Notes: generated from the sequence alone by a model not told the origin. DNA of 64,000 nt from Magallana gigas (GCF_963853765.1 NC_088855.1:36766001-36830000), one strand, 5' to 3'; positions 3,298 through 61,458 are shown, numbered from the stretch's first letter. A program made the numbers and translations.

Positions 3298-4759
3298 TCA
3301 AGGAGCTGGATTGAACAGCATTTGATCCGATGGTACAATGTGTAGGGTTAGGTTCAAACAGGCAAACAGTGGATGCGGGTTTCCTTCATAACTGAAGATC
3401 TTCAGTACGATTATGTAGGCCCCCTGTATGAAATAGATTATCAAAGTGTGTATAGAAATATGACATTAAATATTTAGCATATATAGATATATATAGATAT
3501 ATTAGTTTTTCATTTTTAATGATGGAATTTAAGACTTTCCTTAATTTTATTAGCTTAAAAAGTACATAAATGAACAGAAACTCGCACAAAAAAAAAAGTC
3601 TTTTCATTTATTGCATGAAATTTTTAAATGAATTAAAAAAACTTACGACTGGCAATCTGTTCAAATCGCTGTATTTGTATTGAAACTTATGATTATCTGT
3701 TAAAGAGAAAACGGGTTTCATACTATTGTCAGTTGCATGAGAAATATATAGACTGCTTGTAAATATTAAAGTGAGACGTCAGAAAAGGACATTCAGACAT
3801 ATTTACGTCATTTTAAAAGATATATGAAGAATTAAATGATCGTCTTATACTAGTAAAATATGTACTTAAGAAAAATGGGAGAAAAGTAAGAAAAAAAAAC
3901 ACCAAAAAAAACAAAAACGAGACAGCGCCAACAATTGACATACTAAGTATGGTTTTAAAGAACAATATGCACGTATCTAAGATGTTTTAACATAAAGACT
4001 AAGTTGCTTTGTCATAAACTGACGTAGGACTAAGAGGTCATTATCATAGTTTACAGGTTTACAGATACTTTTGTGATTTACTACCTCCTTTCTTCAAAGG
4101 ACATTGTATAAGCGGTGTCACTTTACTGATATCATTGCAAGCGATCTCTTGAACCACAGAGAAAATAGGATCAGAGCTGCCCTCCATGTACACATCTACA
4201 TTGGCTTGACCCTTTCCGAAGTCTATGGCTGTTTAAGAAAAAAAACCCCGATTTATCAACATGATTATTGCAAGTAGACTTAAAACATAGAATTAACATA
4301 CGCACGCACGCAAGCCCCCCCCCCCCCCCCCAACTCATTTGCATGAAATATATCTTACGATTTGTGATGTCGAAATATAACTGGATAGACTTATCCGGGT
4401 CAATAACTTTCGGTCTCCATGAAACATTCAAATGGGCTCCATCTGGTCCTAAGAAGAAAAAAAATACGATAACAAGCAATTCAGATATAATGATAAATGC
4501 AGTCAATATATTATTGCTCACCACAAACAACGGCTGTTCCCGTATTGTTATCAACTTTAAACTTGTTCTGAAAGCTAGCAGCATTGTATGCGTCCGAAGG
4601 CAGCGAAGACCCAATGGATCTCTGTTCCTCGCTACTTTTCCCGCCAGATCGAATGGTCTCCTTGACTGAGCGTCCACTCCTACTACCGTTCCCCTGGGTG
4701 AACGAGAGAGCGACGAAGACAATGATGGAAGCCAATAACTGTACTATCAGACTGTTCAT
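3298..4759 (-). CDS. ML-1: secreted MD-2-related lipid-recognition (ML) domain protein, LY96/LY86-like, 215 aa
   Basis: Exons 4759-4522, 4448-4359, 4228-4085, 3696-3647, 3423-3298 (238+90+144+50+126 nt), all GT-AG. Signal peptide MNSLIVQLLASIIVFVALSFT. Domain: C|GPDGAHLNVSWRPKVIDPDKSIQLYFDITN|PIDFGKGQANVDVYMEGSSDPIFSVVQEIACNDISKVTPLIQCPLKKG|DNHKFQYKYSDLNRLPV|GAYIIVLKIFSYEGNPHPLFACLNLTLHIVPSDQMLFNPAP*. Confidence 0.9.
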
Positions 4760-6136
4760 TGTGAAGTCAAGCAAACCTATGTAATGGAGGAATATAACTC
4801 TTCATAACGACTTATGAATAAATCCTAATATCAGTTTGACTTCCTGGTGTTGACACTTGATTATAAATGCGCGTTCATGTTTTCTAGAACTTTATTTTGG
4901 GGTCAGTTTAATTTTAAAGTTCATTCAAGAAAACCAGTATACTTTAGTTAAAAGAGGTATGGGATAGGAGTGTGTAAAACTTTTATTCGTGTTGAAAAAA
5001 CATGAAATCTGATGCTTTCATTTTAATTTAATAAAAACCCACCCTGTTTGGGTAAAAAATAGTCCTTGTGTTGTATTTATGTTACAGGAGAGGGATGGAC
5101 ATGCACTTGTCATAACGCATTGTCAACCCCAAAATTAGCATAATACAAAATCAACCATTAATAAAAGACAACGATCTGTAAGTCTCAGTTGCCTATAAAA
5201 GAAACCACGAAAGAAACCCAGATAATTGTTACACATGTATAATCCCATTTTGAGAGGGGACAATACTTCCTCGTTTTGGGTTTTTTTTGGTATGTCATTT
5301 TTCCGCAAGCTCCTCTGTAAACTGTTAAAAATGAATAGAAATGTTTCAATCTGCAGAAAGGAAAATACCTGTATGTACAAAACAATGCATGTCACCAAAG
5401 AAAAACAAATCAAGGAAATACATGGAGGAGGACTGCGTTAACAACTGTCAGCTTTAGGAAGAGTTTACAAATTGACCGAAACCAATCAGGAAAAAAAAAC
5501 CCAATTATTATATTCATCTGCCTGGAAATTGAGAAAATGAAGTTGGAAAACAAAAACCAAACAAAATAAAAAACCATTAACAACACCAACAACAACAACA
5601 CCACAGCTATGCAAAATAAACTTGACTTTGGTGGCATTGGCTTCAATGTCTTGCTGGCAAAAGCCTCTTTGAAATGTACTATTTTTGTACGGAACAACTG
5701 AAATACTGTAAGGTTTGTGTTAGTTTATTGTATTCTCTCATATATATTTTGTGTCATCGATTACACGGTCAGCCTGAAGTGATCTTCAACCGGCCAAAGG
5801 ACTTACAAGCACTTATTTGTTGTACAAGTATATATGCATTATTCTTAAGAGAAAACGACAGTGTTAGTCACGTGTTTAAACACTTGTATTGTTATCCTCA
5901 CAACAAGTGGCACTTCATACGTACAAGTTCTCAAGCATTTTCTACATGTACATGTATATCTAGTGTTACATAATTGTCTGTAAGTCCACATCTACAGGAT
6001 TTTGTTAAAATTTCATTCCTAATCCTTAATATTATGAAAAAACAATTTAATTCAAAAATTGGTTGCGTTTAAAGTCTTTAGTAAGTTTCATTTATCTTCA
6101 TCTTATAGTACTGATGATTTATTTATAGTGATCTCT

Positions 6137-7552: not shown

Positions 7553-9091
7553 CTAAACAAGCTGTACCGTGAAGTTCAAACAGGCAAAGAGTGGATGTGG
7601 GTTTCCTTCGTAGCTAAAGATCTTAAGTGCGATGGTGTACGTTCCCTGTACAAAAATATCAAAATTTTGATTGTCACAAAATCATTAACTATATATCAAT
7701 ATGTTTCACCGATTCAGGTTTACTTCAGTCAACGTTTTTTTAATAAGATTGAAGAATTAAAGGATTAAAACAATATGGAGCATTTACCTAATTGCATCAT
7801 GTGATTGCATTAATCAAATATTTAATCTATTTTGTTTGACTCTCTACAAAAAATAAAGTTAAAAAAAATAAAGATGTAAAGAACTTACAGGTTTAAGCGC
7901 TTTTAATTTGTTGTACTCGAGAGAATGTACAAGTCTATCTGTTAAATAAAAAAAAACACCATATAATGTATAAAAGACTAAAACTAGTATTAATCTCTGA
8001 TTCAATATACATGTATAACATTGAGCGATGTTTTAAAAATTAATTCAATTAAGCAAAATAATGCAAGTTAATTTAATTTACTTACTTCCCTTTTTTAGAG
8101 GGCATTTAACAAATGGGGCCACTTGAGCAATTTGACTGCATGACATGTCTTGATCCAAGGAGAACATCGGGTCACTGCTACCCTTTTGATATAACTCTAA
8201 GTGAACCTGGCCCTTGTCGAAGTCGATGGCTGATAACAGAAAGAAAAATGTAATTAGTTTTCAATTTTTGGAAAAACATTCAATTTTAAAAGATGAAAAG
8301 CATAAGTGAGAGATATCTTACGATAAGTGATGTCAAAATCAACCTTGACGGACTTCTGGGAGTCGACGACCTTCGGTTCCCATGTGATGTTAAAGTGAGC
8401 TCCCTCTGGTCCTGCAAAGTCGGGTTTGAAAACTTATGTATCCCCATTCTTTTTTTAAATAAAGATTTTCGGCATACTCTTATTGTATTTTTGATGATAT
8501 CATACGTTTTAGAATTGTTTGCACAAAATTGACACTGCAAAGAGATCTGATCATTAACTAGAATAAACCTTTGCGTTATTTCATACAAATTTTGAAATAT
8601 TGTAAAAAGTTATCAAAAACTTACTGATTAAAGGAACATTTACAAGCTTTACGACTTCTGAGCAGTGTAAAAGCACATCGTTTTTGAATTAAGCAATTTA
8701 TGAGTAGAATGGTCCACCTACTAGTAATTAACCACCTACCACAAACAACGGCTTTTCCAGGATCGTTGTCGGTTTGGTCTAACCACCGTAAGCCGGAGAG
8801 CGGCAACATTGTTTTCATCTTTCTCAAGCTAGCAGCATTGGATGCCTTTGTCAACAGCGAAGATAACGAGGTCCAAGAGTTACTATTGTCTTCTGGGATT
8901 TCAAAACTAGCAGTATCTTCTTGTCCCTCCTCTCCTCTTCTCCAGCCAAATCGGATGATCTCCCTGATATTTATTTGTTTGTTGACCACGGCATATTTTG
9001 GGAGTCCCCTCCCCTCTCCATCCTCTTGGGAGAATGCAAGACTGACGAAGACAACGACGCAAACCAAAAACTGTGCAGCTAGAGTCTTCAT
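7553..9091 (-). CDS. ML-2: secreted ML-domain protein, LY96/LY86-like, 242 aa
   Basis: Exons 9091-8740, 8411-8322, 8229-8086, 7938-7889, 7645-7553 (352+90+144+50+93 nt). Domain: C|GPEGAHFNITWEPKVVDSQKSVKVDFDITY|PIDFDKGQVHLELYQKGSSDPMFSLDQDMSCSQIAQVAPFVKCPLKKG|NRLVHSLEYNKLKALKP|GTYTIALKIFSYEGNPHPLFACLNFTVQLV*. Confidence 0.9.
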
Positions 9092-9139
9092 GATCAATTC
9101 CTGTAGGTGAGAATTGAACTGTAACTACAAATCATCAAA

Positions 9140-9142
<3 letters not shown>

Positions 9143-9171
<29 letters not shown>
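9143..9171. repeat. (TA)n microsatellite
   Basis: Direct read. Confidence 0.95.
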
Positions 9172-10467: not shown

Positions 10468-10470
<3 letters not shown>

Positions 10471-13150: not shown

Positions 13151-14549
13151 TTACAAATGGCCAACTATTTCTGATGACGGATTGACAAACACACGTTTTG
13201 AAGGAACAATCTGCAGAGTTATGTTTAAACAGGCGAACAATGGAGGTGGATTTTTTTCATAACTGAAGATTTTTGCCACAACAGTGTAAGATCCCTGTAA
13301 GAAAAATGATTATAAGATTATAAATTAGTATGCCGGTCAAACATAATGAACTATGTTACAAATGATTACAGAATGCATGTGTAGTGCTTTTATCAATTTG
13401 TGTTCATAATTATTGAAATCATTAACTAATTTCAGAATCCAAATTCATAAAAGCTTGACCTCTTAAACCATATTTTGAAAAAGCGAGAAAACTCAAATCA
13501 TGTGAAAACCACATTTATAAATGAACCTACCTCGGGTACCCTATTCAAATCACTGTATCGGAAAGAATAAACATGTCTGTCTGTAAAATATAATTTTTGG
13601 ATAATAATGCAAATAACATAAATGAAACAAATACACCAATTTGTGCTTTATGATAAAGATATCAATACTTCATTCAATACCTCCTTTTTTTAACGGACAT
13701 CCTATAAAGGGGGCTACGTGATTGAGGTCATTGCAACCCACGTCTTGGTCCAGGGAGAAAATTGGGTCAGGACTACCTTCCATATAGACGTCTAAGTGGG
13801 CTAGACCCTTGTTGAAGTCGATAGCTATTTAGCAGAATGACATAATTAATCATTCTTAGCTTTTTTTGCATAAGATTACTAGCATATTCTATACATGGAA
13901 AAAATCTTACGATTGGTGACGTCGAAGTAAATCATGACAGACTTTTGTGGATCAATGACCTTTGGAACCCATGAAATGTTTAGATGAGCACCTTTTGGTC
14001 CTGTAAAGATAGATTAAACCTTATGTAATATTCTGGTATTTTTATATGCAAAGATCATATTTAACTATAAAATCCAAACAATTCATGACAACCATTCAAC
14101 AAAATTAGGACATATTATAAGAATTTCAAGAATTGTGGATATTGAAAAGAAGTCTCTGTAGATGGTCCTTCAAATAACTGTTGTTACCTACCACAAACAC
14201 TGGCTGTTCCTGTGTTGTTTTCTGCTTTATCTAACCACTGCAAGCCGGACAATGGCAGCATGCCTTTCAGGTTTTTCAAATTAGCGGCATTATGGGCCTT
14301 CGTCATTAGCGAAGACAGCGAAGTAAGCGAAGAATCAAATACTCCATTGTTCTCTGGGACTTCAATTTTCGCATTCTCTCCTTTCACATCCCCTCCTCTC
14401 CCTCCAAATCGGATGATCTCCTTGATATTTATTTGTTTGTCGATCACAACATAGTTTGTGTCTGATCTTGTTTTTCCGTCCTCTTGTGAAAACGAAAGAC
14501 TGACGAAAGAAATGATTGACAGCAACACTTGTACCTTTAATCTAGTCAT
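13151..14549 (-). CDS. ML-3: secreted ML-domain protein, LY96/LY86-like, 261 aa
   Basis: Exons 14549-14192, 14000-13911, 13824-13681, 13580-13531, 13294-13151 (358+90+144+50+144 nt). Domain: C|GPKGAHLNISWVPKVIDPQKSVMIYFDVTN|PIDFNKGLAHLDVYMEGSPDPIFSLDQDVGCNDLNHVAPFIGCPLKKG|DRHVYSFRYSDLNRVPE|GSYTVVAKIFSYEKNPPPLFACLNITLQIVPSKRVFVNPSSEIVGHL*. Confidence 0.9.
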
Positions 14550-18446: not shown

Positions 18447-19738
18447 TTAGACGACGTGTAAGGTGAAGTTCAAGCAGGCAAACAGATAGTGTTGGTTTCC
18501 TTCATAACTAACGATTTTTGCCACAATAACGTAATATCCCTGAAAAAAAAAATTACAAGACGTTTAATTCATAATTTTATATGGATTAAAAATATTCTAA
18601 ACCATGAAGCATATTTATGTGCTAAGGATAAATTGCTTATTTTTATAAAAAAGATATTTATTTAGATAAATGCTGGAGAAAATGGATTAATAACCATAAA
18701 AGAACTTACACCAGGTATTTTTTCTAAACTGTGGTAATGACGAGAAACAGAAAGTTTTTCTGTAAACAAATTTTTTTGCACAATTAATTTTAAAGGCAAT
18801 ACTACACGTAAAACAAACAAATGTACAAGTCAGAGCGAAATTTTAAAAAAAAGTATTGCTTTATTTAATACCTCCTTTTTTCAATGGACATGATGTAAAG
18901 GGGTCAACACTTTTGATATCAGTGCAAGCGAAGTCTGCAGCCAATGAAAAAATTGGGTTTGGACTACCATCAATATAGACATCTAAGTGGACTTGACCAT
19001 AGTTGAAGTCAATAGCTGTTGAGCATATAACGTGATTATAAAATACTTATATTTCAAGCATATGTATTGCTTATCATTATAGATCAAAATTGAAGATATC
19101 TTACGATTAGTGATATCGATGAAAATCCTGACGGATTTGTTTGTATCAATCACCTTTGGTACCCATGAAATATTTAGATGAGCACCATTTGGTCCTGTAA
19201 AGATAACAAGTTAAACCTGATGTAAAATTCTTGTATTCTTATGCCTAGATCATATGAAACTATAAAACACCAAACAATTCAAGACAATCATTCAACAAAA
19301 TAAAGACATTTTATTAGAATTTCAAGAACTGTGGATATAAACACATAATTTTAAAATAAAGATTTCTCTATAGAGTGGTCCAGCAAAATACTGTTGTTAC
19401 CTACCACAAACGATGGCTGTCCCTGTGTTGTTTTTTGCTTTAACCAACCCCTTCAAGCCAGACAACGGCACCATATTTTTCGAACTAGTAGCACTGTGGG
19501 CATCTGCCAGCAGTGGAGACAGCAAAGATTCTGACAAATCTTTGTCTGCTGAGACTTTATTCTTGGTTGTCTCTCTTTTCACCTCAACTTTTTTCCCACC
19601 AAATCGGATTATCTCTTTGATATTGAATTGCTTGTCAGCATAGTTTGAGCGTCCCCTTTCTTGTCTGTTCCCTTGGGAGAATGAGAAACTGACGATTACA
19701 GTGGTGGAAACCAACAGTTGTATGGTTAAACTAGTCAT
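18447..19738 (-). CDS. ML-4: secreted ML-domain protein, LY96/LY86-like, 236 aa
   Basis: Exons 19738-19405, 19194-19105, 19015-18872, 18759-18710, 18539-18447 (334+90+144+50+93 nt). Domain: C|GPNGAHLNISWVPKVIDTNKSVRIFIDITN|PIDFNYGQVHLDVYIDGSPNPIFSLAADFACTDIKSVDPFTSCPLKKG|EKLSVSRHYHSLEKIPG|GYYVIVAKIVSYEGNQHYLFACLNFTLHVV*. Confidence 0.9.
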
Positions 19739-22744: not shown

Positions 22745-24545
22745 TTACAAATGATCAAATTCATATTGTCCTTGGATTGGTGGTTTGGCAAGCATTTGAT
22801 CTGTTTCTTTTACCCTCAGGGTGAAGTTCAGACAGGCAAACAGCGCATGAGGGTTTGTATCATAACTGATGATCTTCAACACTATAGTATAAGCCCCCTG
22901 TACAAATAGAAGTATAACATAAGTATAAGTTATCATAATAATCAAGTATCATCGAACTATACATTTTATTTCACTAGTTTTTCCCTTTTCTTATTCAACA
23001 CACTGATTTAAAAATACCGGTAATCATCAAGAGTAAAAATAAACTTACGACAGGTACTCGACTTAAATCGCTGTAACTGAATGGTACTTTAATTCTATCT
23101 GGAAAAAGAGGAAACTTGTACAAAATAATGACAATGCCATACAGAAAACCATTAACGTCCATTGCATTAACAAATAATTTTGATTATTTAAGATTAAAGG
23201 ATAAGAACCGAGTTAAAATTTAAGTATGAAAACAAAATGCAACATTTTATGTCAATCTGCATAGTAAAGCATAAAAAAACCAAATAAACAAACAAAAAAA
23301 GGAAACAAACACCCACCCCCCCCCCCAAAAAAAAAACCCCGAAACAATTGACATGCATAATATTTGCTATAGAAAATAAATGTAAACGAAAACAAACTCT
23401 AAGACACTTGAAATTCATTTGTTTTATTTGCTCAAATCAGATTTAAAATTAATTTGAATTGTCCTTAAGCAAAAAATGCCGGGTTGAATACCCAGGCAAA
23501 TCTTATGAAATACAAAAAAAACCCAACTCCTTTCACTTTTTTTTTGTCGTGAAGCTACCTATAATACGGATTTTTTCTGATTACTTTTCCTTTTAACATT
23601 AAGAGCTTCAGAAGTATGGTATAATTAGAATAAATAAAGTCGTTCCAAATTAAAGTCTATAAAAGTCTATCAAGAATAACTTCAAATATCATAACATTCA
23701 ACTTAAATACTAGTTGTTTTAGTACGTACTTCCTTTTTTCAGAGGACATGTAATAAGTTTAGTCATCTGATGAATGTCATTACATGCGATGTCTTGGTCA
23801 ACGGAGAAAACTGGGTCAGGGCTATCCTCCAGATACACATCAATGTGACCTTGACCGTGGCCGAAATCAATAGCTATTTAAACAAATAAACGATAATAAT
23901 TTTTTAAAAATTCTTATTATTGCTAAAAAAAAATTGAACATTTATAAAGCCCTCTTACGATTGATGATGTCCAAATAAAATTTGATCGCCTTTTCTCTAT
24001 CGACGAGTTTTGGTGTCCATGAAACGTTCAAGTGGGCTCCCGGTGGTCCTGTCAAAGAAATTTTTGACATTTTCTAAGTTAGTTATTATTTAAACTTTAA
24101 ACGACAACTTTTAAAAAATAAAATTTTTCCTGAAAACCATATTAAGATTTTTAAAGATTATTGAAAAATAAACTATTGATAAAGAATTGCATGTTCTTAA
24201 ACTTAGTTGCCTACCACAAACGATGGCAGTTCCTGTGTCCGATAGCTCTAGGCCAGACAATGGCAACATATTTTTCATCTTCCTCAAATTAATAGCATTG
24301 GATACCCTCGTTAAAAGAGAAGTCAGTGATGATCCGGATTCCGCATTATCCTTGGGACTATCAAATTCTGAGACCTCTCCATTTGCATCGCCCCTTCTAC
24401 CAAATCTTATGATTTCCTTAACATTGATTTTCTTGTCGACCAGGACATAGTTTGGGCGTCCACGTCCCTCCCCGTCCTCCTGAGAGAACGAGAGACTGAT
24501 GAAGACAATGATGGATGCCAAGCACTGTATTGCCAGACTTTTCAT
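22745..24545 (-). CDS. ML-5: secreted ML-domain protein, LY96/LY86-like, 255 aa
   Basis: Exons 24545-24215, 24048-23959, 23873-23730, 23098-23049, 22897-22745 (331+90+144+50+153 nt). Domain: C|GPPGAHLNVSWTPKLVDREKAIKFYLDIIN|PIDFGHGQGHIDVYLEDSPDPVFSVDQDIACNDIHQMTKLITCPLKKG|NRIKVPFSYSDLSRVPV|GAYTIVLKIISYDTNPHALFACLNFTLRVKETDQMLAKPPIQGQYEFDHL*. Confidence 0.9.
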
Positions 24546-29399: not shown

Positions 29400-31119
29400 T
29401 TACGGTGCTGATTCCAAAAACATGTATGTTGATGGTCTAACCTCTAAGGTAACATTCAGACACACAAACAGCGCTTGGGTGTTTTGTAAATAACTGTACA
29501 CATTCAACACAATAGTGAAAGATCCCTGGAAGTAGAAAGTCGTATTTTACTAAAAATAATTATTTAGCATTAAATATGTTAATGAATACTTTTTTTTTTT
29601 AGAATTTTTGTATTAACCTCAAAATGAAATTTTATCAATTACCAAAGTGAATTCTTTGCTCTTTATGACACATTAACGAGTTTTATATACACCTTTTCTA
29701 TAGAATTCTCTATTTTTTCATTTGCAGAGGCTTTAAAGTATGTAAAAACAAAATCTTTATTAACAACTCGAACATTTACATGGGGGCTAAATACAGATAT
29801 GTCCACCGACAAAAACTTACGACTGGTAATGCTTGTAACTGGTTGAAATGCAAAGGAATTCTAGAAAACTTATCTGCAAATCAAAAGTTAAATTTTTCAT
29901 CGAACAAAAATGTTGATTAAATAACAGTATTGTAAAATTCACATTGTAATGAAGGCAATGAATACAAAAAACAAATTTCAAACCTCCTTTTTTTAGAGGG
30001 CACAGAATGGGATACAATTTAATAAAGTCATCACAAGCGATTTCTTGATCCATTGAAAAAAGTCTGTCAGGGCTACCTTTCAAATACACATCAACATGGG
30101 CCTTACCCTCGGTAAAGTTCGTAGCTGTGTAACAAAAAAAATTGTTCTTTTTAAAAAAAACGTTGTTTAAAAAAATATCAATGAGAAATATCAAAATATT
30201 GTTGTAAATAAGCCTTACGAGCAATGAAGTCGACATGAATCTGGACGAACCTTTCCGGGTCGATTATTTTTGGTTTCCATGTTACGTTAAATTCAGCACC
30301 TTCTGGTCCTTGAATTAAATTTAAATGTTGAAATAATTGTTATTTTTAAAGAGAATATTTATCTTTCAATAAGATCTTTTCTAAATTAGCTTACTCATGC
30401 GCTAAGGCCCATTAATATTATATACGAAGTTAGTTTTTCTTGTCTCTGCATAAAATCTATTGAATTCTTGATTTTAACACATAAATTGTTAAATTTGTTG
30501 GTAATACATAATCTTAGTAATAAATCATACTCAAAAGTCAACAACTCAACCATTTATCAATAGTTAGACAAAAACACATATCTTGGTCAAGTAATAATGC
30601 AAACAAACATTGATTCAATCCTCATTTCCCACTGATATTAAGGACATATCCTTTTTTAACGGAAACAGGCTTTTAAAAAAAAGGTGAAATAATTATGCAT
30701 TCTAATTATATAACGCTTCCTCTTTTCCATTTACAATGATTGTAAATGCTAAAAGAAAAATTGAAGGCACCACAAACAATAGCTCGTCCCGTGTTATTGT
30801 CTGTTTCTTTATTAATTGGTGTCGGCAACAACATTTTTGTCTTCCCCAAACTAGCATCAGTTGACGCCTTTATCGGCAAAAATAGCATAGATGCAAGTGA
30901 TCTGTATTTCTGGTGAACTTCTCCCTGCGCATCGCCTGCCCTCTCGCCATATCGGATGATCTCCTTGATACTGACTGGTTTGTTCACGATACTTTTTGGT
31001 CTTTTTCGCTCTGTTGCGTCCTGTTGGGAAAGCGAGAGACTGACAGACACAAGAAGGAGAAGTTTTATGGGCAGTCTTGTCTTTATCAAAGTCTGCAAGC
31101 AAAATTGAACGAAAATCAT
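29400..31119 (-). CDS. ML-6: secreted ML-domain protein, LY96/LY86-like, ~252 aa (start codon uncertain)
   Basis: Exons 31119-30771, 30308-30219, 30124-29984, 29873-29821, 29525-29400 (349+90+141+53+126 nt). Domain: C|GPEGAEFNVTWKPKIIDPERFVQIHVDFIA|PTNFTEGKAHVDVYLKGSPDRLFSMDQEIACDDFIKLYPILCPLKKG|DKFSRIPLHFNQLQALPV|GSFTIVLNVYSYLQNTQALFVCLNVTLEVRPSTYMFLESAP*. The first donor, GTGCCT, is weak. Confidence 0.85.
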
Positions 31120-35910: not shown

Positions 35911-35946
<36 letters not shown>

Positions 35947-35964
35947 GGAGGCGAAGCCGAGCCG

Positions 35965-35997
<33 letters not shown>

Positions 35998-36062
35998 AGT
36001 GAGTCAGTAACGGAAATATATTGGTTGATCAATTTCATAGATGGCGAGGCGAAGCCGAGCCG

Positions 36063-36095
<33 letters not shown>

Positions 36096-36120
36096 AGTGA
36101 GTCAGTAACTAACCTAATAA
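35886..36120. mobile_element. Palindromic element with a tandemly duplicated ~99 bp hairpin unit
   Basis: Outer ends ttattaggttagttactgactcact / agtgagtcagtaactaacctaataa. Inside, two units of ggaaatatattgggttgatcaatctcatagatgg-gaggcgaagccgag-ccgtctatgagattgatcaacccaatatatttcc. Confidence 0.8.
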
Positions 36121-48818: not shown

Positions 48819-50137
48819 TTATGATGTAGCAATGTGGAGGGTGAAGTTCACACAGGCAACCAGTGGTGGATTTGCCTCAAAACTGAAGATTTTCAAAACA
48901 ATGGTATACGATCCCTGTAAGAAATACATTATCAAAATTTATCTGCATTCGAATTTAGAGAGATAATGATGGGTAAAATAATATATAGTTCTGGTATGTG
49001 GATATTTCACAAAAAATTTACCACAGGTAGGTCGTCTAACTTGCTGTATTGAATCGCAAATCTGATTGGCGCTATAAAAAAGTGTACAAAATATTATCTT
49101 TTGTATTTGTCACACATATATCAATTTTGAGATATTTTGATTTATTTTCAATCTTAATTTACATACCTCCTTTTTTTAAAGGGCACATTATTAAAGGGTC
49201 CAGTTGTTTAAAGAAACTACAAGATGTTTCTCGATCCACGGAATACATTGGGTAAGAGCTACCTTTTAGATATACATCAAGAATCCCATGACCTTTGTCG
49301 AAGTATGTTGCTGTCATGCAAAACAAATTACATGTAATTATACAAAGACAAAAACTGTAAAGAAGAAAAATTATTTTTTCTGTTAAATACATAGATAAAT
49401 TAGGCTTTCATAAAGGCGATTTTATGAAACAATTTTCATAACATCTCTTCTTGAAACGATCAAAGATTCTTGTCATAGATCGAGATATAACGATTACTTG
49501 TTTAATAATTACACTAAAAGGAATTTCGACTATATAACTCAGTCATATTGCTTTTGCTTACGACTGATGATGTCAAAGTATATTCTAACACACTTATACG
49601 GGTCAATCACTTTGGGTCTCCACGTAATGTTCAGATGAGCACCTTTTGGTCCTTTAAAAAAAAAATCATTTTAAATATTAACGAAATAAAAATGTAATTA
49701 AGAATAAAGGTAAAAGATATATAAGGCATTGAGTAAAATTGATTTTGAGCAAGTGTGTTTGTAAATAAAGTAAATGTTCATTCTATTTTATTACCACAAA
49801 CAATGACTGTTCCCGTATTGTTATCAGCTTCATCTGACAACTGCAGTCCCACCAGCGACAGCTTATTTTTCAGAAATTTTAACTTTGCGTCAGTTGATGT
49901 CTTTGCAAACAGAAAAGACTTGGAAGACCATAAGGATTCGTTGTTCTGTATGATCTCAAAATCCTCAATGTTTTTATTCTGTGATTCGACCCTTTTTCTA
50001 TCGATGAAAATTTTGTAATTGAATTTCTTGCTGACCGTGGCATAGCGTTGGGAATTCCGTCTTGCTCCATCCTCATGAGAGACAGACTGACTGATGAAAA
50101 CAACGACGAATGCCAGTTGTACCGATAGATTCATCAT
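48819..50137 (-). CDS. ML-8: secreted ML-domain protein, LY96/LY86-like, 240 aa (5-Cys subfamily, closest paralog of ML-7)
   Basis: Exons 50137-49795, 49651-49562, 49310-49167, 49071-49022, 48914-48819 (343+90+144+50+96 nt). Domain: C|GPKGAHLNITWRPKVIDPYKCVRIYFDIIS|PTYFDKGHGILDVYLKGSSYPMYSVDRETSCSFFKQLDPLIMCPLKKG|APIRFAIQYSKLDDLPV|GSYTIVLKIFSFEANPPLVACVNFTLHIATS*. Confidence 0.9.
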
Positions 50138-54441: not shown

Positions 54442-56169
54442 TCAAACAATATCTTCTGAAGTCTTAGAAATGATTTGAGGTGTTTGAGTGGCGGACATAT
54501 GCTTTGATGATTCAATCTGTAGACTAAAGTTCAAACAAGCAAACAGTGGTGGAGGTTTAGCAGCGTAACTGAAGATCTTCAACAAAACGATATAAGACCC
54601 CTGTATAAAAAAATCGATAAATGAGAACGTCTAATGGTTTCATGATACTCGTGAATCAGCATTAATTCAAATTCCAAAGAACTCGTATACAAGGATATAT
54701 CAAACTCTATTGCATTGGTTTAAATTTCAACTGCAGAACTTGTAAACAGCTATGACTTCCTCAGAAAACTATATCTTATATGAATTGTCACATCAACGAA
54801 TGTTAAAAATATTGTTGCAATAAAAACAGTATTATTTTGTGTGCATACAATCTAAATAATAATTCATTTAGAAATTTTAGCATTGAATTCTCTGTTGGTT
54901 CTCTTTGTGTCTTTTACTGTGAACAAGAACCACAACAAACTTTTTGCTTTTAGTTTTAGAGCATTATGAAACACTAAGGTAAAACCAGTCTATTGCACCA
55001 AAATCCTTCGTTATTACAGGACAGTGCTTGGTGAAAGCTACATGCAAAAATAACATTTACATGTACATACTAGAGAAAAAATACTTACAGCAGGTTGTAA
55101 TTGTGTTTCGCTGTACTTAAACGATATGCGGAAACCATCTGTAAAAATAAAAGAGATGGAGAGAATGTTAGTTTATACGTTAAAATAAATGACGAATGAA
55201 AATATGTTTTAAAACACGATAAAACAACTGCATAAAGCTTAATAGAAATAAGACTCAGTTTCCGTACTCCCTCTTTTTATAGGACATCTTATAAGTGGGA
55301 CCCAATTATTGATGTCAGTGCAGGTTATCCCTTCATCAATAGAGAAAACTGGGTTGGGTATACCCTTTCTATAGACATCTATGCGAGCGAGACCCTCCTT
55401 AAAATCGATGGCTGTTGAGCAAAAAAAAATATTGATAGTTTCGTTTGATCATTCATATTTCTTTGAATAATGCAATATGTGATTTCGAATACGTCTTACG
55501 ATAAACAAGATCCAGGTATATCTGGACTGATTTTTCGGTACTGATGACTTTTGGTTTCCATGTTATGTTCAGATGAGCACCTTCTGGTCCTTTGAAAAAA
55601 CAGAAAATTGATAATATTAATTAACTGCCTTTATTTTACTGAAAATAAAACTTTAAGTTTCAAAACTCCTTGAATATTTGAACTATTAGTTGTAGACACA
55701 AAAATCGTTTATATACAAGCTTTATTAAATACAAATCCTGAAATATAAGTACCTGGCAGCATATAAGTATGTTTCAAAACGGTTGTCCAATATTCAATGA
55801 AGAAACGTGCATCATTATAAAAAAAAGTAAAAGATATTTACCACAAACAAATGCTGTTCCTGTGCTGTTATCAGTATTATTGAACCACTGTAAACCTTTT
55901 GATTGGAACATATCATTATTCAATTTAAAGGCATTGGATATTTTCGTTAAAAAAGAAGACAGCTGAGATTTATTGGATTCCTTTTCCTCAGCATTCTCTC
56001 TCACTGTTACACTTTTTGTCTCGCCTATTCGTATAATCTCTTCGACATTGATTTTTTTGTCGAATAGAAGATAGTTTGTGTGTCCTTTTACTTCTTTGTC
56101 CTTTTGTGAGAAGGAGATACTGCTGAAAACAGCTATAGATGCCAACAGTTGTACAGCTAGGATTTTCAT
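54442..56169 (-). CDS. ML-9: secreted ML-domain protein, LY96/LY86-like, 256 aa
   Basis: Exons 56169-55842, 55589-55500, 55411-55268, 55138-55089, 54600-54442 (328+90+144+50+159 nt). Domain: C|GPEGAHLNITWKPKVISTEKSVQIYLDLVY|PIDFKEGLARIDVYRKGIPNPVFSIDEGITCTDINNWVPLIRCPIKRG|NGFRISFKYSETQLQPA|GSYIVLLKIFSYAAKPPPLFACLNFSLQIESSKHMSATQTPQIISKTSEDIV*. Confidence 0.9.
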
Positions 56170-56559
56170 TGTCACGGTCGTTGTCTAAGAGTAAGAAAAA
56201 CAAATAAAGCAACTTAAATAACATTGTTACTTCCTGGATTACCGGTAGCAAGGTTAATAAATCTATATTTTACGACAATGTTTTAAATGAAGTATGCTTA
56301 TTTTTTTTTAGGGAAATTGCTACCTTCTTTTTATTTTGATAATTTTTTTTTCTTCAAAATATCTGAATCTCCTGCTTTTTTCGTCTTTGGAGTCTTGATT
56401 AGTGGCATATTACTACATTTGTTTTAGATTACAATAAGATACGAGTGTCCATGAAACTAATGGTAATCAAAGTACTGAAGAACTGACGGGAGTTGATTTT
56501 GTCGATGTTTATTTATTTTAAAATCAATGATATGTTATTTTGCATAAGTACATGTACAC

Positions 56560-56966
56560 TACCGATCAGACCCAATCTAACACCAGAGTAAACCCCAACT
56601 AAACCCCGGGTTTAATTTCTGGGTTTACTTTGGTTTTACTTTTTGAAAATTTGGGTCCACTCGGGGTTTACTTTGGGTTTACTCGAGAATTGCTTTTGGA
56701 GTCAACTATACGCACTGAAGTGTAAAGCTGACCTGTATTTTATCTTATCATCCTACTGCCTGTGATTCCTGCCCCTTGTATATATTCAGAATACACATGT
56801 AGCGTCTGTTTTCAGGGTATACTTCTGATCGGGGTTTACTCTCTGTGTCCACTCTGGGTTTACTTGGGGTTTACTCTGGGTTTACTCTGGGTCCACTCTA
56901 GTAAACCCAGAGTAAACCCAGGGTTTAGTTGGGGTTTACTTTCTGTTAGGTTGGGTCTGATCGGTA
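56560..56966. mobile_element. MITE with ~45 bp imperfect TIRs and multiple internal GGGTTTACT repeats
   Basis: Left taccgatcagacccaatctaac...gagtaaaccccaactaaaccc; right gggtttagttggggtttact...gttaggttgggtctgatcggta; TA at both ends. Confidence 0.8.
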
Positions 56967-58117
56967 CTGTAGTTTCTTAGAATTTGAATTACGCACATTT
57001 TTATAATATGAATTTTTGGACTTTTTCGACAAGAATGTCGAGAAACCCCCATATGAATCATGTTAAATAATATTTAAAGATAAAATTGATATAATCAAAC
57101 TATGTATCAGAAATAGAAATATTTCTCGAAAACGCTCGGCTGACATCGTAAATCTCCGACAAGGATTTACGGAGACAGCCGATGTTCGAGTTGAACGAGA
57201 CTATATTGAACTCTGCCGTAGGAATACATACGACTACAAAAAATATTTAAATTGTTCGCACCATTTAAAATCTGACTATTTTCAAGGTATTTATAAATCA
57301 GTTTCCTTGAAAAACAATGCTTTAGAATACATTACATCGAATTTATCAATTATTTTCAAGAACGAAGTCTTGTCAGCAGCAATGATTTGTGCTGAGGTCC
57401 AAACACTGTTTCACTTTCGGTTTGTCTGAGTAATTGCATAGGAGAGTTGATTAAAATCAACTCCCAAAAACGGCAATTTAACAATACTAACGACACAGAA
57501 ATCAAATTTTGAACAAGATGCAAAAAGAAACTAAATTTATTATAAACAAAAACATTATGACGAGTATATCTTTTTAAAAAGGATCTATTTTAAAACTTTT
57601 ACTCATTATAGAAAAATTAATACATTTTATTTTCAATACCAAATATATATACTAGTATTGATTATAATTAAATGTGATGCATATGAACTTTAACTGAATT
57701 CCAATATCAATCCAGTTTACGATCTTTAAAGTTGTGAAAAGCTGATCACCGTGATAAGTATAAAAGTAAGTAAGCGATAACACTCTTATATTAGTTGAAT
57801 AAAACAGGATTGACCATATGTATGCAAATTAATAAACAAATTAACTGTGCATTACATGCTGATAAAAAGTTGGAAAAAAGAGAGAGAGAAAAGGAAAGGA
57901 ATTCAAATGACTTCAGACTAACCTTTTTCTTCGTTATGGTTTTCCACAGGGTACTGTTTTTAAAAATGCTAACAAAAGTGTGTGTGTGTGGGGGGGGGGG
58001 GGATGAGTAGTACTTATAAGAGATTTACAACTTCCTAGTTCATTTCGATGATTGTTTGCACCATCTGAGGCATCAGTGGTGCATTGAAGAGGTTTCCTCT
58101 TTAGTACTTTTCTATTT

Positions 58118-58420
58118 TCAGTGTATTTTGTGTAAAAATGAAGTGGCAATATTTTGTTCAGTGGTAGAGCTTGTTACAGCTTTAAACGCCTTTTCTATCA
58201 ATAAAAATAGTGATAAAAGCAAACGGAATAAGTTTTCCTTTGGAACAGCGCACTCCTCCACATCTTCTAATGTTTCCAGTCTTTTGACGACATATCGGAT
58301 GATCTCCGTAATGCTTTTCAATCACGGCATATTTTGACAGTGTCTTTCCTCTCCTTCTTCTCGGAAAAATGGGACAATAACAATAAAGACAAAAACAGTA
58401 TAAACGAAAATAAAGTTATA
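58118..58420 (-). pseudogene. Orphan, frameshifted ML exon-1 relic
   Basis: Minus strand reads hydrophobic codons then ...GAAGGAGAGGAAAGA...AAATATGCCGTG...GGAGATCATCCGATAT, matching ML-2 exon 1 (EDGEGRG.PKYAVV...EIIRFG). Frameshifts present, no ATG at the family position, and no exons 2-5 found between it and ML-9. Boundaries approximate. Confidence 0.7.
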
Positions 58421-59722
58421 TAGGTATGTTTTTAATGGCTTTAAAACAAGTATGAACAATTATCTCAACTTTTGTGACTTATTTCGTTATTACAAATTCG
58501 ATGTAAAATTATTGGAGAGTTTCGAGTTTGGTGGGGGGGGGGGGGGGGAGGGGGGGGGGGGTTGGAGCTTTTTTATAACATATTTCCCTTGTAAAAGTAG
58601 TCAGAAAGTGTGTAATTTACTTTGTGAAAAGTCAACATAAAGAAACAACATTTTCCAAACACAAATATTCAAATGAAGGTGAAAAACAAGAATTCTATCA
58701 TTAATTACGAAAAAACGTCTTCCAAAGATGAAACAATACCTCCTGCTTAGTCGCTGCTTTAAATTAACCATTGAACCAAATAGACGTGACAGCTATCACT
58801 TTATGCAAGTTTACATTGAAAAAAAAGCAACAACATTTTCGATAATATTCGGAGTTCTTTTAAACAAACATTACAAAACGGGATAACATTTTATTAATAT
58901 AATCTAAACGATACCCTTTATGCTGTGTGTTGAAATAAATATGAAGGTTACAATAAATACAACATTTGTTATTATAAATATTCGTCACATAAGAGCAACT
59001 TTTTTTATCAGGAATAAATCAAGATTGAATAAAGAATGTGACATGCAATGAATGTCAAGGGAATTTGCCCAGTTGGCAGAATTGTTACCTTTCTTCTTCT
59101 TCTTCTTCTTTTTCTTCTTATGAAAAACGTTTTCTGCTGTTTGGTAGGTAAAGTTTTGTTAATTACAAGCGTTAACCTACTTCACGCGAGACAAGCCACC
59201 AAACGGTGGACTGTGTTCGTCCTGATCAAGGAGATTTTTAACATCACAGCTATAGTCATTTCAGACTTTGATGTTTCGATTGTTGTTTTTTACCTTTATT
59301 ATTAAGAAGACAATAATATGATTTCGAGAATGAAGGACACATTGTGTTTGTTTTCATTCAGTCATTCTTTATTCCTTTTAGGCTTTACAACACATCAGTA
59401 TTGACATAGATATAATATAGATTCCATACATATAAACAGATGAACAAGAGCTAGAATGGACAAAATGCCTTAATTAGTTAAGGTAACATAATATCATTTC
59501 GCAATATTAATCTACACTTTTATTATATATATTCTTTCAAATTCTGTTCATACCTTTTGAATTTTCTGAGTTTAAAAGTTGCACAAGTTTGATCATTGAA
59601 GGCCTTTTCCAAAAATAATGTTTGATATATTTTTTCCATTATCTATGTCATGGGAATTTAAAATGTGAGATTGTATAATTAAGATATGCAAATAGAAATT
59701 GGATTAGCAACATATGTTTTGT

Positions 59723-61458
59723 CTATACATATTGGAACGTAAAGTTCAAACACGAGAACAGTAATGGGGGATTTTCAGCATAGCTAAATATCTTCATCAC
59801 CAAAATTTGTTCTTTTACCTATAAAAAAAAAATGTTCAACATTTACCAATCCCAATTCATATTTAAGAATTTGATAACGCTGTGACATCTGTTTCCAATA
59901 ACTAGTGATACCAAATTTTTTTTCGATAAAATCAACATTAGACAAAAAGAGGGGGGATGAAAAAAAATGGCGTTGGAAATTAAAACTGAAAGTGCGCAGA
60001 ATACAGAAAAATCCTCGGCAAACAGGAATAAGCGTCAATGTCTAACAGGTCACTCTAGTAAAATAAGATCATTGAAAAGTTTATCTCCACATATGAGAAA
60101 TTAATTTCTTAAGGAAGAAATACTGCAAACAATGACTTTTGATAGAATATCTTCTTTCAGGAATTTATCTCTCATTGATATCATTGATTTGCCTGGGCAA
60201 TGATAAAAGAAACCCAATAGATCAAAAGAGGTAGTAACAGGCTACCTACGTATGATCTGAAAAGGAACTTACGAGTGGTGGCTGTCGTAATGGGAAATCA
60301 GTATAAGAATATTGGATTCTTTCTGTAAACGAAGAAATTATTCGTATAAAGCAAAGTCATCGTTGTAAAAATAAGGGCTAGTAACCCAAATTATTAAAAA
60401 TGAAAGATCTTTAAAAAGAATTAACAATTTCTTTACTCACCTCCTTTTTCCAAAGGACATTTTTGTTGCATCTTTGGGACTTTTAGGATGTCACTGCAAG
60501 TTATATCTTCGTCCAATGAGAAAATTGGGGTATTTCCTAAGTAAAATTCCACGTACATCCGACCCTTGTTGAAGTCAGTAGCTGTTTTAAAGAAGAATTA
60601 ATATAATAACTAAATGATAAATGAGTCGTTCTTTTATATTTTTCCTCCACAAATACAACATTGTATAACTATTTATCTTACGACTGATCATGTCTACAGA
60701 AAACGTGACCGGTTTTCCAAATTCGATTATTTTGGGTATCCACGTGACGTTCAGGTGAGCTCCTTTTGGTCCTAATGAGGAAAAATCCATTTATGAGCAT
60801 ATTTTTTTTAATTTATGTTTTATTTCACTTATAATTAAGGGGTGTAGGAAACCCTCGTTTTGAAACAAAACTGTCTTTCGAAATAAACTACAAATATATC
60901 TTTTTTCTCTTGTTTTATACAAAGGAACTTCAGTTGGTTACGAATGTAAATTTTGTTATACATTTTGCACCTTAATAAGTTCTGAAATCTAAAAAAGTCC
61001 ATTTTCAATATTTTAAAACAGTGGTAAAACTTTGTACTCTCATCCATATAAAGATCTCAGAGTATTCCATACGACCTTAATTTCAGTCTTACTGTGTGTC
61101 TTAAAGGTATTCTTTACAAGTATAAAGATGGAACGGTCCATAGAACTATCATCGTACCACAAACCACAGCAGTTCCTGTGTTATTGTCGGCATTATCATC
61201 TCCCAAGGTAACAGCTTCGGAAGCGTTCGCCAGCAGCTGAGACAGTAAATATCCGAGGTTTTTCTTTTCATGGGGAGCTTCCATCTCTCCATGTGACTCG
61301 TCTCTTATTCCGCCAAATCGGATGATCTCCTTGATACTGATTTTCTTGTCGAAAACAACATAGGTTGGGTGGTCCCTGCCTTCTCCGTCCTCTTTGGAGA
61401 ACGAAAGACTAATGAAGACAATGATGGAAGCCAAAAACTGTACAGCCAAGCTTTTCAT
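59723..61458 (-). CDS. ML-10: secreted ML-domain protein, LY96/LY86-like, 225 aa (most divergent domain)
   Basis: Exons 61458-61158, 60771-60682, 60581-60441, 60322-60273, 59818-59723 (301+90+141+50+96 nt). Domain: C|GPKGAHLNVTWIPKIIEFGKPVTFSVDMIS|PTDFNKGRMYVEFYLGNTPIFSLDEDITCSDILKVPKMQQKCPLEKG|ERIQYSYTDFPLRQPPL|VKEQILVMKIFSYAENPPLLFSCLNFTFQYV*. Confidence 0.88.

What the first reader, a model, noticed from the sequence alone, without database searches (positions are those of the whole stretch)
3298..61458. Ten intact, head-to-tail MD-2-like lipid-recognition genes: a diversified invertebrate lipid-sensor array
Seen: ten same-strand genes with identical five-exon architecture, open frames, signal peptides and four invariant Cys (VCG, xC, CPLKKG, FACLN). 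Two N-glycosylation sequons are kept in 10/10 copies (exon 2 N-x-S/T; exon 5 CxN-x-T/S), while much of the rest has diverged. The ORF track shows only fragments of this. Established: ML beta-cup domains bind lipids such as lipid A, sterols and glycolipids; vertebrate MD-2 and MD-1 are single-copy partners of TLR4 and RP105; oysters have greatly expanded TLR families. Inference: this is a repertoire of lipid/LPS co-receptors with different specificities that could pair with the expanded TLRs. I cannot check whether the array is already published.
Basis: partly seen in the sequence, partly recalled or inferred. Interest (0 to 1): 0.85.

Follow-up and report, generated by a model that had tools for sequence, protein, structure and literature searches.

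The report
Oyster tandem array of ML-domain genes
Ten neighbouring, intact and transcribed Pacific-oyster genes encode secreted lipid-binding proteins of the ML (NPC2/MD-2/Der p 2) fold, but they are already annotated, are no closer to MD-2 than to other ML proteins, and have no demonstrated link to Toll-like receptors.

Summary
Window 3298-61458 carries exactly ten same-strand (minus) genes. Each has five exons, GT/AG introns, an open frame, four invariant cysteines and two N-glycosylation sequons kept in 10/10 copies.

They are ML-domain proteins. Spliced products pass the Pfam PF02221 cut-off. An AlphaFold model of the domain (pLDDT >90) matches only ML structures at the top: yeast NPC2 Z 12.7, GM2A 10.9, MD-1 10.4, Der p 2 10.1, MD-2 9.3-9.7.

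Nine copies have spliced-transcript evidence; the tenth (ML7) has indirect evidence. ML2 is LOC109617045/G35227, a published haemocyte-cluster marker in two single-cell studies.

The genome is Magallana (Crassostrea) gigas. The five full-length RefSeq proteins recovered (ML1, ML2, ML4, ML5, ML8) match my models at 100%; the ML3 entry matches only its first 197 residues. [quoted passage not shown]

The specific reading, an MD-2-like repertoire of TLR co-receptors, is untested. By sequence MD-2 is the weaker match and by fold it ranks below yeast NPC2, GM2A and MD-1. A disordered extension of about 50-90 residues precedes the domain, which MD-2 lacks.

Best reading: a Magallana-lineage expansion of a mollusc-wide ML subfamily of secreted lipid carriers or sensors, kept under purifying selection. 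Interest is modest.

The parts
3298..4759 (-). ML1 (215 aa). Exons 4759-4522, 4448-4359, 4228-4085, 3696-3647, 3423-3298.
   Evidence: Model. 100% identical to RefSeq XP_011448693.2, LOC105343149. Spliced transcript cluster P0085, 96.7% over the full length.
7553..9091 (-). ML2 (242 aa). Exons 9091-8740, 8411-8322, 8229-8086, 7938-7889, 7645-7553.
   Evidence: Model. 100% identical to XP_019928834.2, LOC109617045. Spliced P0005 passes PF02221 at 28.2 bits. The MLDP qPCR primers of PMC12064177 match exactly, and the reverse primer spans the exon 1/2 junction.
13151..14549 (-). ML3 (261 aa). Exons 14549-14192, 14000-13911, 13824-13681, 13580-13531, 13294-13151.
   Evidence: Model. Spliced transcript cluster P0074 (261 aa, 98.1%, 171 member sequences). 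RefSeq XP_065935596.1 agrees only for residues 1-197.
18447..19738 (-). ML4 (236 aa). Exons 19738-19405, 19194-19105, 19015-18872, 18759-18710, 18539-18447.
   Evidence: Model. 100% identical to XP_034318115.1, LOC117686692. Spliced P0082, 98.7%.
22745..24545 (-). ML5 (255 aa; 263 aa if the upstream in-frame ATG at 24569 is used). Exons 24545-24215, 24048-23959, 23873-23730, 23098-23049, 22897-22745.
   Evidence: Model. 100% identical to XP_034318114.1, LOC105343150. Spliced P0009 seen on 27 contigs. RNA runs hold about 0.5 of the locus words. The AF2 model was built on P0009.
29400..31119 (-). ML6 (251 aa). Exons 31119-30771, 30308-30219, 30124-29984, 29873-29824, 29525-29400.
   Evidence: Model. 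Fragment P0031 (82 aa, 98.8%) spans the exon 3/4/5 junctions. UniProt fusion models contain it at over 99%. Very divergent alleles exist.
37955..39352 (-). ML7 (240 aa). Exons 39352-39013, 38808-38719, 38462-38319, 38221-38172, 38053-37955.
   Evidence: Model. Transcription evidence is indirect only. RNA-seq run X9 holds 0.51 of the locus words against an exonic share of 0.52, while DNA runs hold 0.94-0.96.
48819..50134 (-). ML8 (239 aa; 240 aa with the ATG one codon upstream). Exons 50134-49795, 49651-49562, 49310-49167, 49071-49022, 48914-48819.
   Evidence: Model. 100% identical to XP_011448700.2, LOC105343154 (P0017).
54442..56169 (-). ML9 (256 aa). Exons 56169-55842, 55589-55500, 55411-55268, 55138-55089, 54600-54442.
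   Evidence: Model. A 1000-nt RNA contig in run X4 skips exactly introns 1-3 with CT..AC ends on the + strand. Run X7 confirms introns 1 and 2. Intron 4 lay outside the stretch laid.
59723..61458 (-). ML10 (225 aa). Exons 61458-61158, 60771-60682, 60581-60441, 60322-60273, 59818-59723.
   Evidence: Model. A 954-nt RNA contig in run X4 skips exactly introns 2-4. Run X7 and raw reads of X22 confirm two of them.

Best explanation
The window holds a tandem array of ten paralogous genes in Magallana (Crassostrea) gigas. All are intact and nine are shown to be spliced and transcribed.

Each gene encodes three parts:
- a signal peptide;
- a charged, fast-evolving extension predicted to be disordered, about 50-90 residues long, with a short conserved I-(K/R)-E-I-I-R-F-G-like core;
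- a C-terminal ML domain of about 135 residues. This is the beta-sandwich lipid-binding fold of NPC2, Der p 2, GM2A, MD-1 and MD-2, here with two predicted disulfides and two conserved N-glycan sites.

Shown: gene structures, ML-domain membership, ML fold, transcription, purifying selection, haemocyte expression of ML2, and restriction of the ten-copy clade to the Magallana lineage in the sequences sampled.

Inferred: the proteins are secreted into haemolymph or a secretory compartment and each holds a hydrophobic ligand in the sandwich cavity. Sequence divergence would give the paralogs different ligand preferences. They would then act as soluble lipid carriers or sensors, plausibly for microbial lipids such as LPS/lipid A or for sterols, in or around haemocytes.

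They belong to a mollusc-wide ML subfamily (Mytilus, pectinids, Pinctada, Haliotis). They are not orthologues of vertebrate MD-2.
For: Gene models and invariant features.

Identity with RefSeq M. gigas proteins and UniProt names.

ML-domain membership: PF02221 at 25.7-39.5 bits against a 22.7 cut-off in six spliced proteins, and 36 of 37 family members match.

Fold: AF2 model with pLDDT 90-98 over residues about 113-245. The top 27 PDB matches are all ML proteins, Z 8.3-12.7, then a drop to 6.7. Foldseek agrees.

Transcription:
- spliced full-length or junction-spanning products for ML1-6 and ML8;
- exact intron joints for ML9 and ML10 in RNA contigs and reads;
- word share equal to the exon share for ML7.

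Haemocyte expression of ML2: marker MLDP/G35227 of cluster 4 in PMC12064177, with primers matching ML2 exactly. LOC109617045 is also a marker of a lysozyme-positive haemocyte cluster in PMC13509791.

Constraint: dN/dS of the ML domain is 0.12-0.34 between paralogs and 0.14-0.48 between orthologues.

Age and lineage:
- dS between paralogs is mostly above 1, and only exons align between most copies;
- ML1-10 form one clade (95/89) that excludes the C. virginica, Ostrea and Saccostrea sequences.

Relatives in other molluscs.
Against: - No ligand, localisation or secretion has been shown for any copy.
- The signal peptide was not checked with a dedicated predictor.
- Expression context is known only for ML2. 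In PMC12064177 its cluster is interpreted as immature, blast-like haemocytes rather than effector cells.
- The tissues of the RNA runs that hold ML5, ML7, ML9 and ML10 are unknown.
- The tree may under-sample paralogs of other oyster genera, because homologues came from a word-based search. 'Magallana-specific' is therefore provisional.
- The N-terminal extension has no confident structure (pLDDT about 50) and no assigned role.
Confidence: 0.6

Rival explanations
1. The ten proteins are MD-2-like co-receptors. Each binds a different microbial lipid and docks on one of the many oyster Toll-like receptors to trigger signalling.
For: - The ML fold is shared with MD-2 and MD-1.
- The profile hits MD-1 at 6.6e-5.
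- ML2 is expressed in haemocytes.
- Arthropod ML proteins that bind LPS and act with Toll receptors are reported in abstracts PMC9832027 and PMC8915966 (abstracts only, not read in full).
Against: - There is no specific affinity to MD-2. The profile E-value is 0.12 and Z is 9.3-9.7, against 12.7 for yeast NPC2.
- The N-terminal extension is absent from MD-2 and MD-1.
- There are only four conserved Cys. From my own knowledge, MD-2 has seven.
- No TLR gene lies in the window. The only interleaved gene is a C1q-domain gene.
- No interaction was tested.
Confidence: 0.12
2. They are NPC2-like carriers for sterols and other host or dietary lipids, working in lysosomal, digestive or haemolymph transport with no role in pathogen sensing. 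The expansion would reflect nutritional lipid handling, as proposed for NPC2 expansions in other invertebrates.
For: - The best structural match is yeast NPC2, at Z 12.7 and rmsd 2.4-2.6 over 126-128 residues.
- The best sequence match among solved structures is ant NPC2.
- PG/PI-transfer proteins and NPC2 top the Swiss-Prot fold search.
- NPC2-like expansions with non-sterol roles are described in a fluke, PMC6979364 (abstract).
Against: - The genome has other, more canonical PF02221 loci with stronger exon-level scores on contigs 6, 8 and 4. These are better candidates for the housekeeping NPC2.
- The array proteins keep only two of the three NPC2 disulfide pairs.
- ML2 is a haemocyte-subset marker that is co-listed with lysozyme.
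Confidence: 0.22
3. The functional product is partly the N-terminal extension. It would be a propeptide, or a precursor of small peptides, released by cleavage, with the ML domain acting as carrier or chaperone.
For: - A conserved core is embedded in an otherwise fast-evolving, charged, disordered extension.
- R-F-G followed by basic residues in ML5 (RFGRR) and ML4 (RFGGKK) resembles an amidation and cleavage signal.
- An ML8 variant lacks about 45 residues of the extension.
Against: - The basic residues after R-F-G are not conserved across the ten copies.
- Dibasic sites are few and not aligned.
- Relatives in other molluscs have a much shorter extension.
- There is no peptide evidence.
Confidence: 0.05
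4. The array is decaying duplicated DNA, and most copies are non-functional.
For: None found.
Against: - All ten frames are open and all 40 introns have canonical splice sites.
- Nine copies have spliced transcripts.
- dN/dS is well below 1 in the ML domain, although dS is above 1 between most copies.
Confidence: 0.01

Closest known systems
NPC2 / fungal NPC2 (phosphatidylglycerol/phosphatidylinositol transfer protein), e.g. PDB 6r4m, 6r4n, 3wea, 5kwy
   Same: - Same Pfam family (PF02221) and same beta-sandwich fold.
- Best structural match: Z 12.6-12.7, rmsd 2.4-2.6.
- Best sequence match among solved chains is ant NPC2 at 4.9e-5.
- Secreted or lumenal, with a conserved C-P-x-K-K-G loop cysteine pair and a C-terminal Cys.
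   Different: - Only four conserved Cys (two predicted disulfides) rather than six.
- A disordered extension of about 50-90 residues precedes the domain.
- Ten tandem paralogs rather than one housekeeping gene.
- About 12-16% identity.
- Sterol binding is untested.
MD-2 (LY96) and MD-1 (LY86), partners of TLR4 and RP105
   Same: ML fold. MD-1 scores Z 10.0-10.4 and MD-2 Z 9.1-9.7. The family profile hits MD-1 at 6.6e-5. Both are secreted glycoproteins of immune cells.
   Different: - Not closer to these than to NPC2, GM2A or Der p 2.
- MD-2 is hit only at E 0.12 by sequence.
- The N-terminal extension is absent in MD-1 and MD-2.
- The cysteine pattern differs.
- No evidence of TLR binding or lipid A binding.
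Invertebrate ML-protein expansions (15 ML-domain proteins in Aplysia, PMC9334734; NPC2-like genes in Clonorchis, PMC6979364; arthropod ML/NPC2 proteins such as shrimp PvML1, PMC9832027)
   Same: Multi-copy, lineage-specific families of small secreted ML proteins in invertebrates. Some are reported to bind LPS and to affect antimicrobial responses.
   Different: - This is a distinct mollusc-wide subfamily (Mytilus, pectinids, Pinctada, Haliotis).
- In oysters it has gained a long N-terminal extension.
- In the Magallana lineage it forms a ten-gene head-to-tail array.
- None of its members has been studied functionally, as far as I could find.
Mite group 2 allergens (Der p 2, Der f 2) and GM2 activator protein
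   Same: Same fold: Der p 2 Z 10.1 and GM2A Z 10.5-10.9. Same superfamily of lipid binders.
   Different: Low identity (10-16%). No N-terminal extension. Different cysteine count. GM2A is larger and lysosomal.

Membership tests
ML domain family (Pfam PF02221, E1_DerP2_DerF2) | Profile HMM score above the curated gathering cut-off (22.7 bits) | tested here: met
   P0005 (=ML2) 28.2 bits, P0009 (=ML5) 27.2 bits, orthologues 25.7-39.5 bits. 36 of 37 subfamily members match. Exon-by-exon six-frame search of the genome did not pick up the array; only spliced products score.
ML domain family (Pfam PF02221, E1_DerP2_DerF2) | Immunoglobulin-like beta-sandwich fold superposable on solved ML proteins | tested here: met
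   AF2 pLDDT is 90-98 over the domain. The top 27 PDB entries are all ML proteins at Z 8.3-12.7, and the next unrelated fold scores 6.7. Foldseek probability is 1.00.
ML domain family (Pfam PF02221, E1_DerP2_DerF2) | Conserved cysteines forming the N-to-C-terminal disulfide and the loop disulfide next to C-P-x-K-K-G | tested here: inconclusive
   Four Cys are invariant in 10/10 copies at the expected places. Three of them align with NPC2 cysteines in the profile alignment.
ML domain family (Pfam PF02221, E1_DerP2_DerF2) | Binds a lipid in the sandwich cavity | not testable with these tools
   Needs recombinant protein and lipid-binding assays.
MD-2/MD-1 subfamily (TLR4/RP105 co-receptors) | Closer in sequence to MD-2/MD-1 than to other ML subfamilies | tested here: not met
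   Profile against PDB sequences: ant NPC2 4.9e-5, MD-1 6.6e-5 to 4e-3, yeast NPC2 6.6e-4, MD-2 0.12.
MD-2/MD-1 subfamily (TLR4/RP105 co-receptors) | Closer in structure to MD-2/MD-1 than to other ML subfamilies | tested here: not met
   Yeast NPC2 Z 12.7, GM2A 10.9, MD-1 10.4, Der p 2 10.1, MD-2 9.3-9.7.
MD-2/MD-1 subfamily (TLR4/RP105 co-receptors) | Mature protein is essentially the ML domain alone (about 140 residues after the signal peptide) | tested here: not met
   A 48-88-residue extension lies between the signal peptide and the domain in all ten copies. It is predicted to be disordered.
MD-2/MD-1 subfamily (TLR4/RP105 co-receptors) | Forms a complex with a TLR-family ectodomain and presents lipid A | not tested
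   No candidate TLR partner is indicated by the locus. The complex-prediction job was not spent, because the report does not claim binding.
NPC2 (sterol transporter) orthologue | Six conserved cysteines (three disulfides) and a single-copy housekeeping gene | tested here: not met
   Only four invariant Cys and ten tandem copies. Other PF02221 loci with stronger exon scores lie on contigs 6, 8 and 4.

The most novel reading that the evidence does not exclude
The ten paralogs would form a diversified set of soluble, haemocyte-derived lipid sensors, each with its own ligand specificity. They would hand microbial lipids to members of the expanded oyster TLR or other receptor families. The disordered N-terminal extension would act as a regulatory or cleavable module. 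The very divergent ML6 alleles would point to balancing or diversifying selection by pathogens.
Probability: 0.12. Interest if true: 0.7.

Novelty: new member of a known kind. Interest (0 to 1): 0.3.

Why it matters
How molluscs sense LPS and other microbial lipids is unsettled. The Aplysia survey (PMC9334734) found an LBP and 15 ML-domain proteins but no CD14 orthologue. A compact, well-defined set of ten expressed ML genes, one already a haemocyte-subset marker, is a tractable entry point: express each domain, profile its lipid ligands, and test receptor partners.

The result also has practical value for annotation:
- It gives exact, transcript-supported models for all ten genes.
- It shows that several database entries (K1RHT2 at 843 aa, A0A8W8MVB3 at 700 aa, XP_019928835.1 at 491 aa) are fusions of neighbouring copies.
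- It shows that qPCR or scRNA-seq markers for 'MLDP' need paralog-specific design.

As biology it is an ordinary kind of finding. Lineage-specific expansions of ML/NPC2-type genes are common in invertebrates, and these genes are already annotated as ML-domain proteins.

Tried and rejected
- **Pfam over the whole genome.** A six-frame PF02221 search did not detect the array, because the domain is split over four short exons. It found only six exon hits elsewhere. This is a sensitivity limit, not evidence against membership.
- **Single-sequence PDB search.** phmmer of ML5 against PDB sequences found nothing. A family profile was needed.
- **Getting full-length proteins.** Spliced proteins could not be passed by reference. 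I therefore recovered identical or near-identical database proteins by querying with the ML2 exon-1 open frame plus its intron read-through and then with a family alignment.
- **Pervasive positive selection.** Pairwise dN/dS is below 1 nearly everywhere. The single value near 1 (ML4 against P0080, ML domain, dS 0.06) rests on few changes.
- **Recent gene conversion.** Non-coding parts do not align between copies, except ML7/ML8 and partly ML3/ML4.
- **High RNA depth at 56285-57484.** This is nested interspersed repeats, not part of the genes.
- **RNA families.** Rfam found nothing in the window.
- **Literature.** Searches by LOC numbers, UniProt accessions and domain names found no study of the array.
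- **Complex prediction with a TLR.** Not run. No specific partner is indicated and the report makes no binding claim.
- **Site-level analysis.** Cavity volume, disulfide distances and mapping of variable sites onto the cavity could not be done, because model coordinates are not exposed to scripts.

Full report
**1. What is in the sequence**

A motif scan of the six frames and a tblastn with the first hand-built copy found ten related genes. All are on the minus strand between 3298 and 61458. I then fixed every exon boundary by frame, length and splice signal.

- All ten genes have five exons, all 40 introns are GT..AG, and all frames are open. The products are 215-261 residues long.
- Exon 2 is 90 nt and exon 4 is 50 nt in every copy. 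Exon 3 is 144 nt (141 in ML6 and ML10). Exons 1 and 5 vary in length.
A third sequon just before the first cysteine is present in 8/10.
- Pairwise identity is 37-59%, and 75% for ML7/ML8.
- A profile search of the whole 564-Mb assembly puts all 40 exon matches inside the window. The array is complete at ten copies and the subfamily has no other members in this genome.
- One unrelated gene, a C1q-domain gene, sits between ML7 and ML8.

**2. Which organism, and is it already annotated**

The models are 100% identical to RefSeq proteins of Magallana (Crassostrea) gigas:

| Copy | RefSeq protein | Locus |
|---|---|---|
| ML1 | XP_011448693.2 | LOC105343149 |
| ML2 | XP_019928834.2 | LOC109617045 |
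| ML4 | XP_034318115.1 | LOC117686692 |
| ML5 | XP_034318114.1 | LOC105343150 |
| ML8 | XP_011448700.2 | LOC105343154 |

- RefSeq calls them 'uncharacterized protein'. [quoted passage not shown]
- Collinear orthologues exist in C. angulata (LOC128190369 to LOC128190383).
- Several older entries are fusions of adjacent copies: K1RHT2 (843 aa), A0A8W8MVB3 (700 aa) and XP_019928835.1 (491 aa).
- The RefSeq model for ML3 (209 aa) departs from mine after residue 197. A cluster of 171 transcript-derived sequences supports the 261-aa form.

**3. Are they ML-domain proteins**

Yes.

- Six spliced proteins of the family pass the PF02221 cut-off, at 25.7-39.5 bits against 22.7. 36 of 37 subfamily members match.
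- An AlphaFold2 model of ML5, built on a 37-sequence alignment, has pLDDT 90-98 across residues about 113-245.
- Its top 27 PDB neighbours are all ML proteins: yeast NPC2 Z 12.7, GM2 activator 10.9, MD-1 10.4, Der p 2 10.1, ant NPC2 10.0, MD-2 9.3-9.7, human NPC2 9.5. The next, unrelated fold scores 6.7. Foldseek against PDB and Swiss-Prot models agrees.
- A family profile against PDB sequences hits ant NPC2 (4.9e-5) and MD-1 (6.6e-5) about equally, and MD-2 only at 0.12.

The fold and family are therefore confirmed. 'MD-2-like' in the narrow sense is not: the proteins are roughly equidistant from all ML subfamilies and slightly nearest to NPC2-type members.

**4. The N-terminal extension**

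Between the signal peptide and the domain lie 48-88 residues.

- They are hydrophilic, charged and poorly conserved, apart from a short I-(K/R)-E-I-I-R-F-G-like core and an M-L-P-L-S-G-L-like stretch.
- The model gives them pLDDT of about 50.
- They evolve faster than the domain: dN/dS is 0.19-0.85 against 0.14-0.48 between orthologues.
- Relatives in Mytilus, scallops, Pinctada and Haliotis are 174-213 residues long. They have a much shorter extension that still carries a similar x-(K/R)-E-(F/Y) core.
- MD-2, MD-1, NPC2 and Der p 2 have nothing comparable.

The function of the extension is unknown.

**5. Transcription**

- Full-length or junction-spanning spliced products from public RNA assemblies exist for ML1 (P0085), ML2 (P0005), ML3 (P0074), ML4 (P0082), ML5 (P0009), ML6 (P0031) and ML8 (P0017).
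- I laid RNA-seq contigs and reads on 55085-61070. One contig skips exactly introns 1-3 of ML9 and another skips introns 2-4 of ML10, at my predicted boundaries. A second run and raw reads support them.
- For ML7 the evidence is indirect. An RNA run holds 0.51 of the locus words, matching the exonic share of 0.52, while DNA runs hold about 0.95.

The refutation criterion 'most copies not transcribed' is not met.

**6. Expression context**

- In the C. gigas haemocyte single-cell study PMC12064177, the marker 'MLDP' (G35227, 'ML domain-containing protein') defines transcriptomic cluster 4. The authors interpret this cluster as immature, blast-like cells.
- Its qPCR primers match ML2 with no mismatch, and the reverse primer spans the ML2 exon 1/2 junction.
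- Independently, LOC109617045 (ML2) is listed as a marker of a lysozyme-positive haemocyte cluster in PMC13509791.
- Nothing comparable is known for the other nine copies.

**7. Evolution**

- Between paralogs, dS is mostly above 1 and the ML domain has dN/dS of 0.12-0.34.
- Introns and flanks no longer align, except for ML7/ML8 and partly ML3/ML4. The duplications are old and there is no sign of recent homogenisation.
- In a maximum-likelihood tree the ten copies form one clade (support 95/89). It excludes the sequences recovered from C. virginica, Ostrea edulis and two Saccostrea species. Several paralogs have their own orthologues at 72-93% identity in other transcriptomes.
- This suggests expansion in the Magallana lineage. 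The caveat is that the homologue search was word-based and may have missed paralogs in other genera.
- ML6 stands out. Another C. gigas entry (XP_011448699.1) is only 79% identical to it, and the positional orthologue in C. angulata only 75%, whereas the other copies are 97-99% identical between these taxa.

**8. Interpretation**

The supported picture is a family of secreted, glycosylated ML-fold lipid binders, kept by selection and expressed. At least one member is made by a haemocyte subset.

- A role in binding microbial or host lipids in haemolymph is the most economical mechanism. It rests on homology, not on data for these proteins.
- An NPC2-like lipid-transport role is the main rival.
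- The pseudogene reading is excluded.

**9. Novelty and score**

- Multi-copy ML/NPC2-type families are well known in invertebrates: 15 ML-domain proteins in Aplysia (PMC9334734) and an NPC2-like expansion in a fluke (PMC6979364, abstract).
- The oyster genes are already in RefSeq and UniProt with the ML annotation.
- What I did not find in the searchable literature is a description of the ten-gene array, its oyster-specific long extension, or any functional work.

I rate it a new member of a known kind, with modest interest (0.3).

Noticed in passing
window 42678-43106 (-), probably with 45027-45380 (-) as first exon: A C1q-domain gene (PF00386, E 1.3e-20) sits inside the array between ML7 and ML8 on the same strand. 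The upstream open frame has a signal-peptide-like start and no Pfam match.
   Followed up: partly
window 56465-57470: Nested interspersed repeats: an element of about 420 bp with terminal inverted repeats, inserted into another repeat of about 590 bp. The first look found more than 4,700 candidate copies in the genome. This explains the very high two-strand RNA depth between ML9 and ML10.
   Followed up: yes
window 29400-31119 (ML6): ML6 has very divergent forms in public data. It is 79% identical to C. gigas XP_011448699.1 (LOC105343152) and 75% to the positional orthologue in C. angulata (LOC128190371). The other copies are 97-99% identical between the two taxa. Possible explanations are divergent haplotypes under balancing selection or a presence/absence paralog.
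   Followed up: partly
window 49795-50134 (ML8 exon 1): Public proteins of 197-198 aa (XP_011448700.1 and transcript-derived P0192) equal ML8 but lack about 45 residues of the N-terminal extension. This could be an allele with a deletion or an alternative splice inside exon 1.
   Followed up: no
window 24380-24410 (ML5) and 19580-19610 (ML4), exon 1: The conserved core ends in R-F-G followed by basic residues in some copies (ML5 RFGRR, ML4 RFGGKK). This resembles an RFamide-type cleavage and amidation signal, but it is not conserved across the ten genes.
   Followed up: partly
window 38719-38808 (ML7) and 49562-49651 (ML8), exon 2: ML7 and ML8 share an extra, fifth cysteine in the ML domain (P-Y-K-C-V-R). 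It is unpaired by count and absent from the other eight copies.
   Followed up: no
database entries K1RHT2, A0A8W8MVB3, XP_019928835.1, A0A8W8MZ03, XP_065935596.1: Several public gene models fuse two to four neighbouring array members (843, 700, 491 and 377 aa). The RefSeq model for ML3 (209 aa) diverges after residue 197 from the 261-aa form supported by transcripts.
   Followed up: yes
window 33861-34939 (+) and 35911-36109: Two open frames of 168 and 110 aa with no Pfam match lie in the ML6-ML7 spacer. Next to them is a 98-bp unit repeated twice, and the unit is itself palindromic. This may be a transposon remnant.
   Followed up: partly
genome contig 6 at about 12.47 Mb, contig 8 at 22.37 Mb, contig 4 at 12.86 Mb (outside the window): Other, more canonical PF02221 exon hits, including a cluster of four on contig 6. 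These are likely the NPC2-type ML genes of this genome.
   Followed up: no
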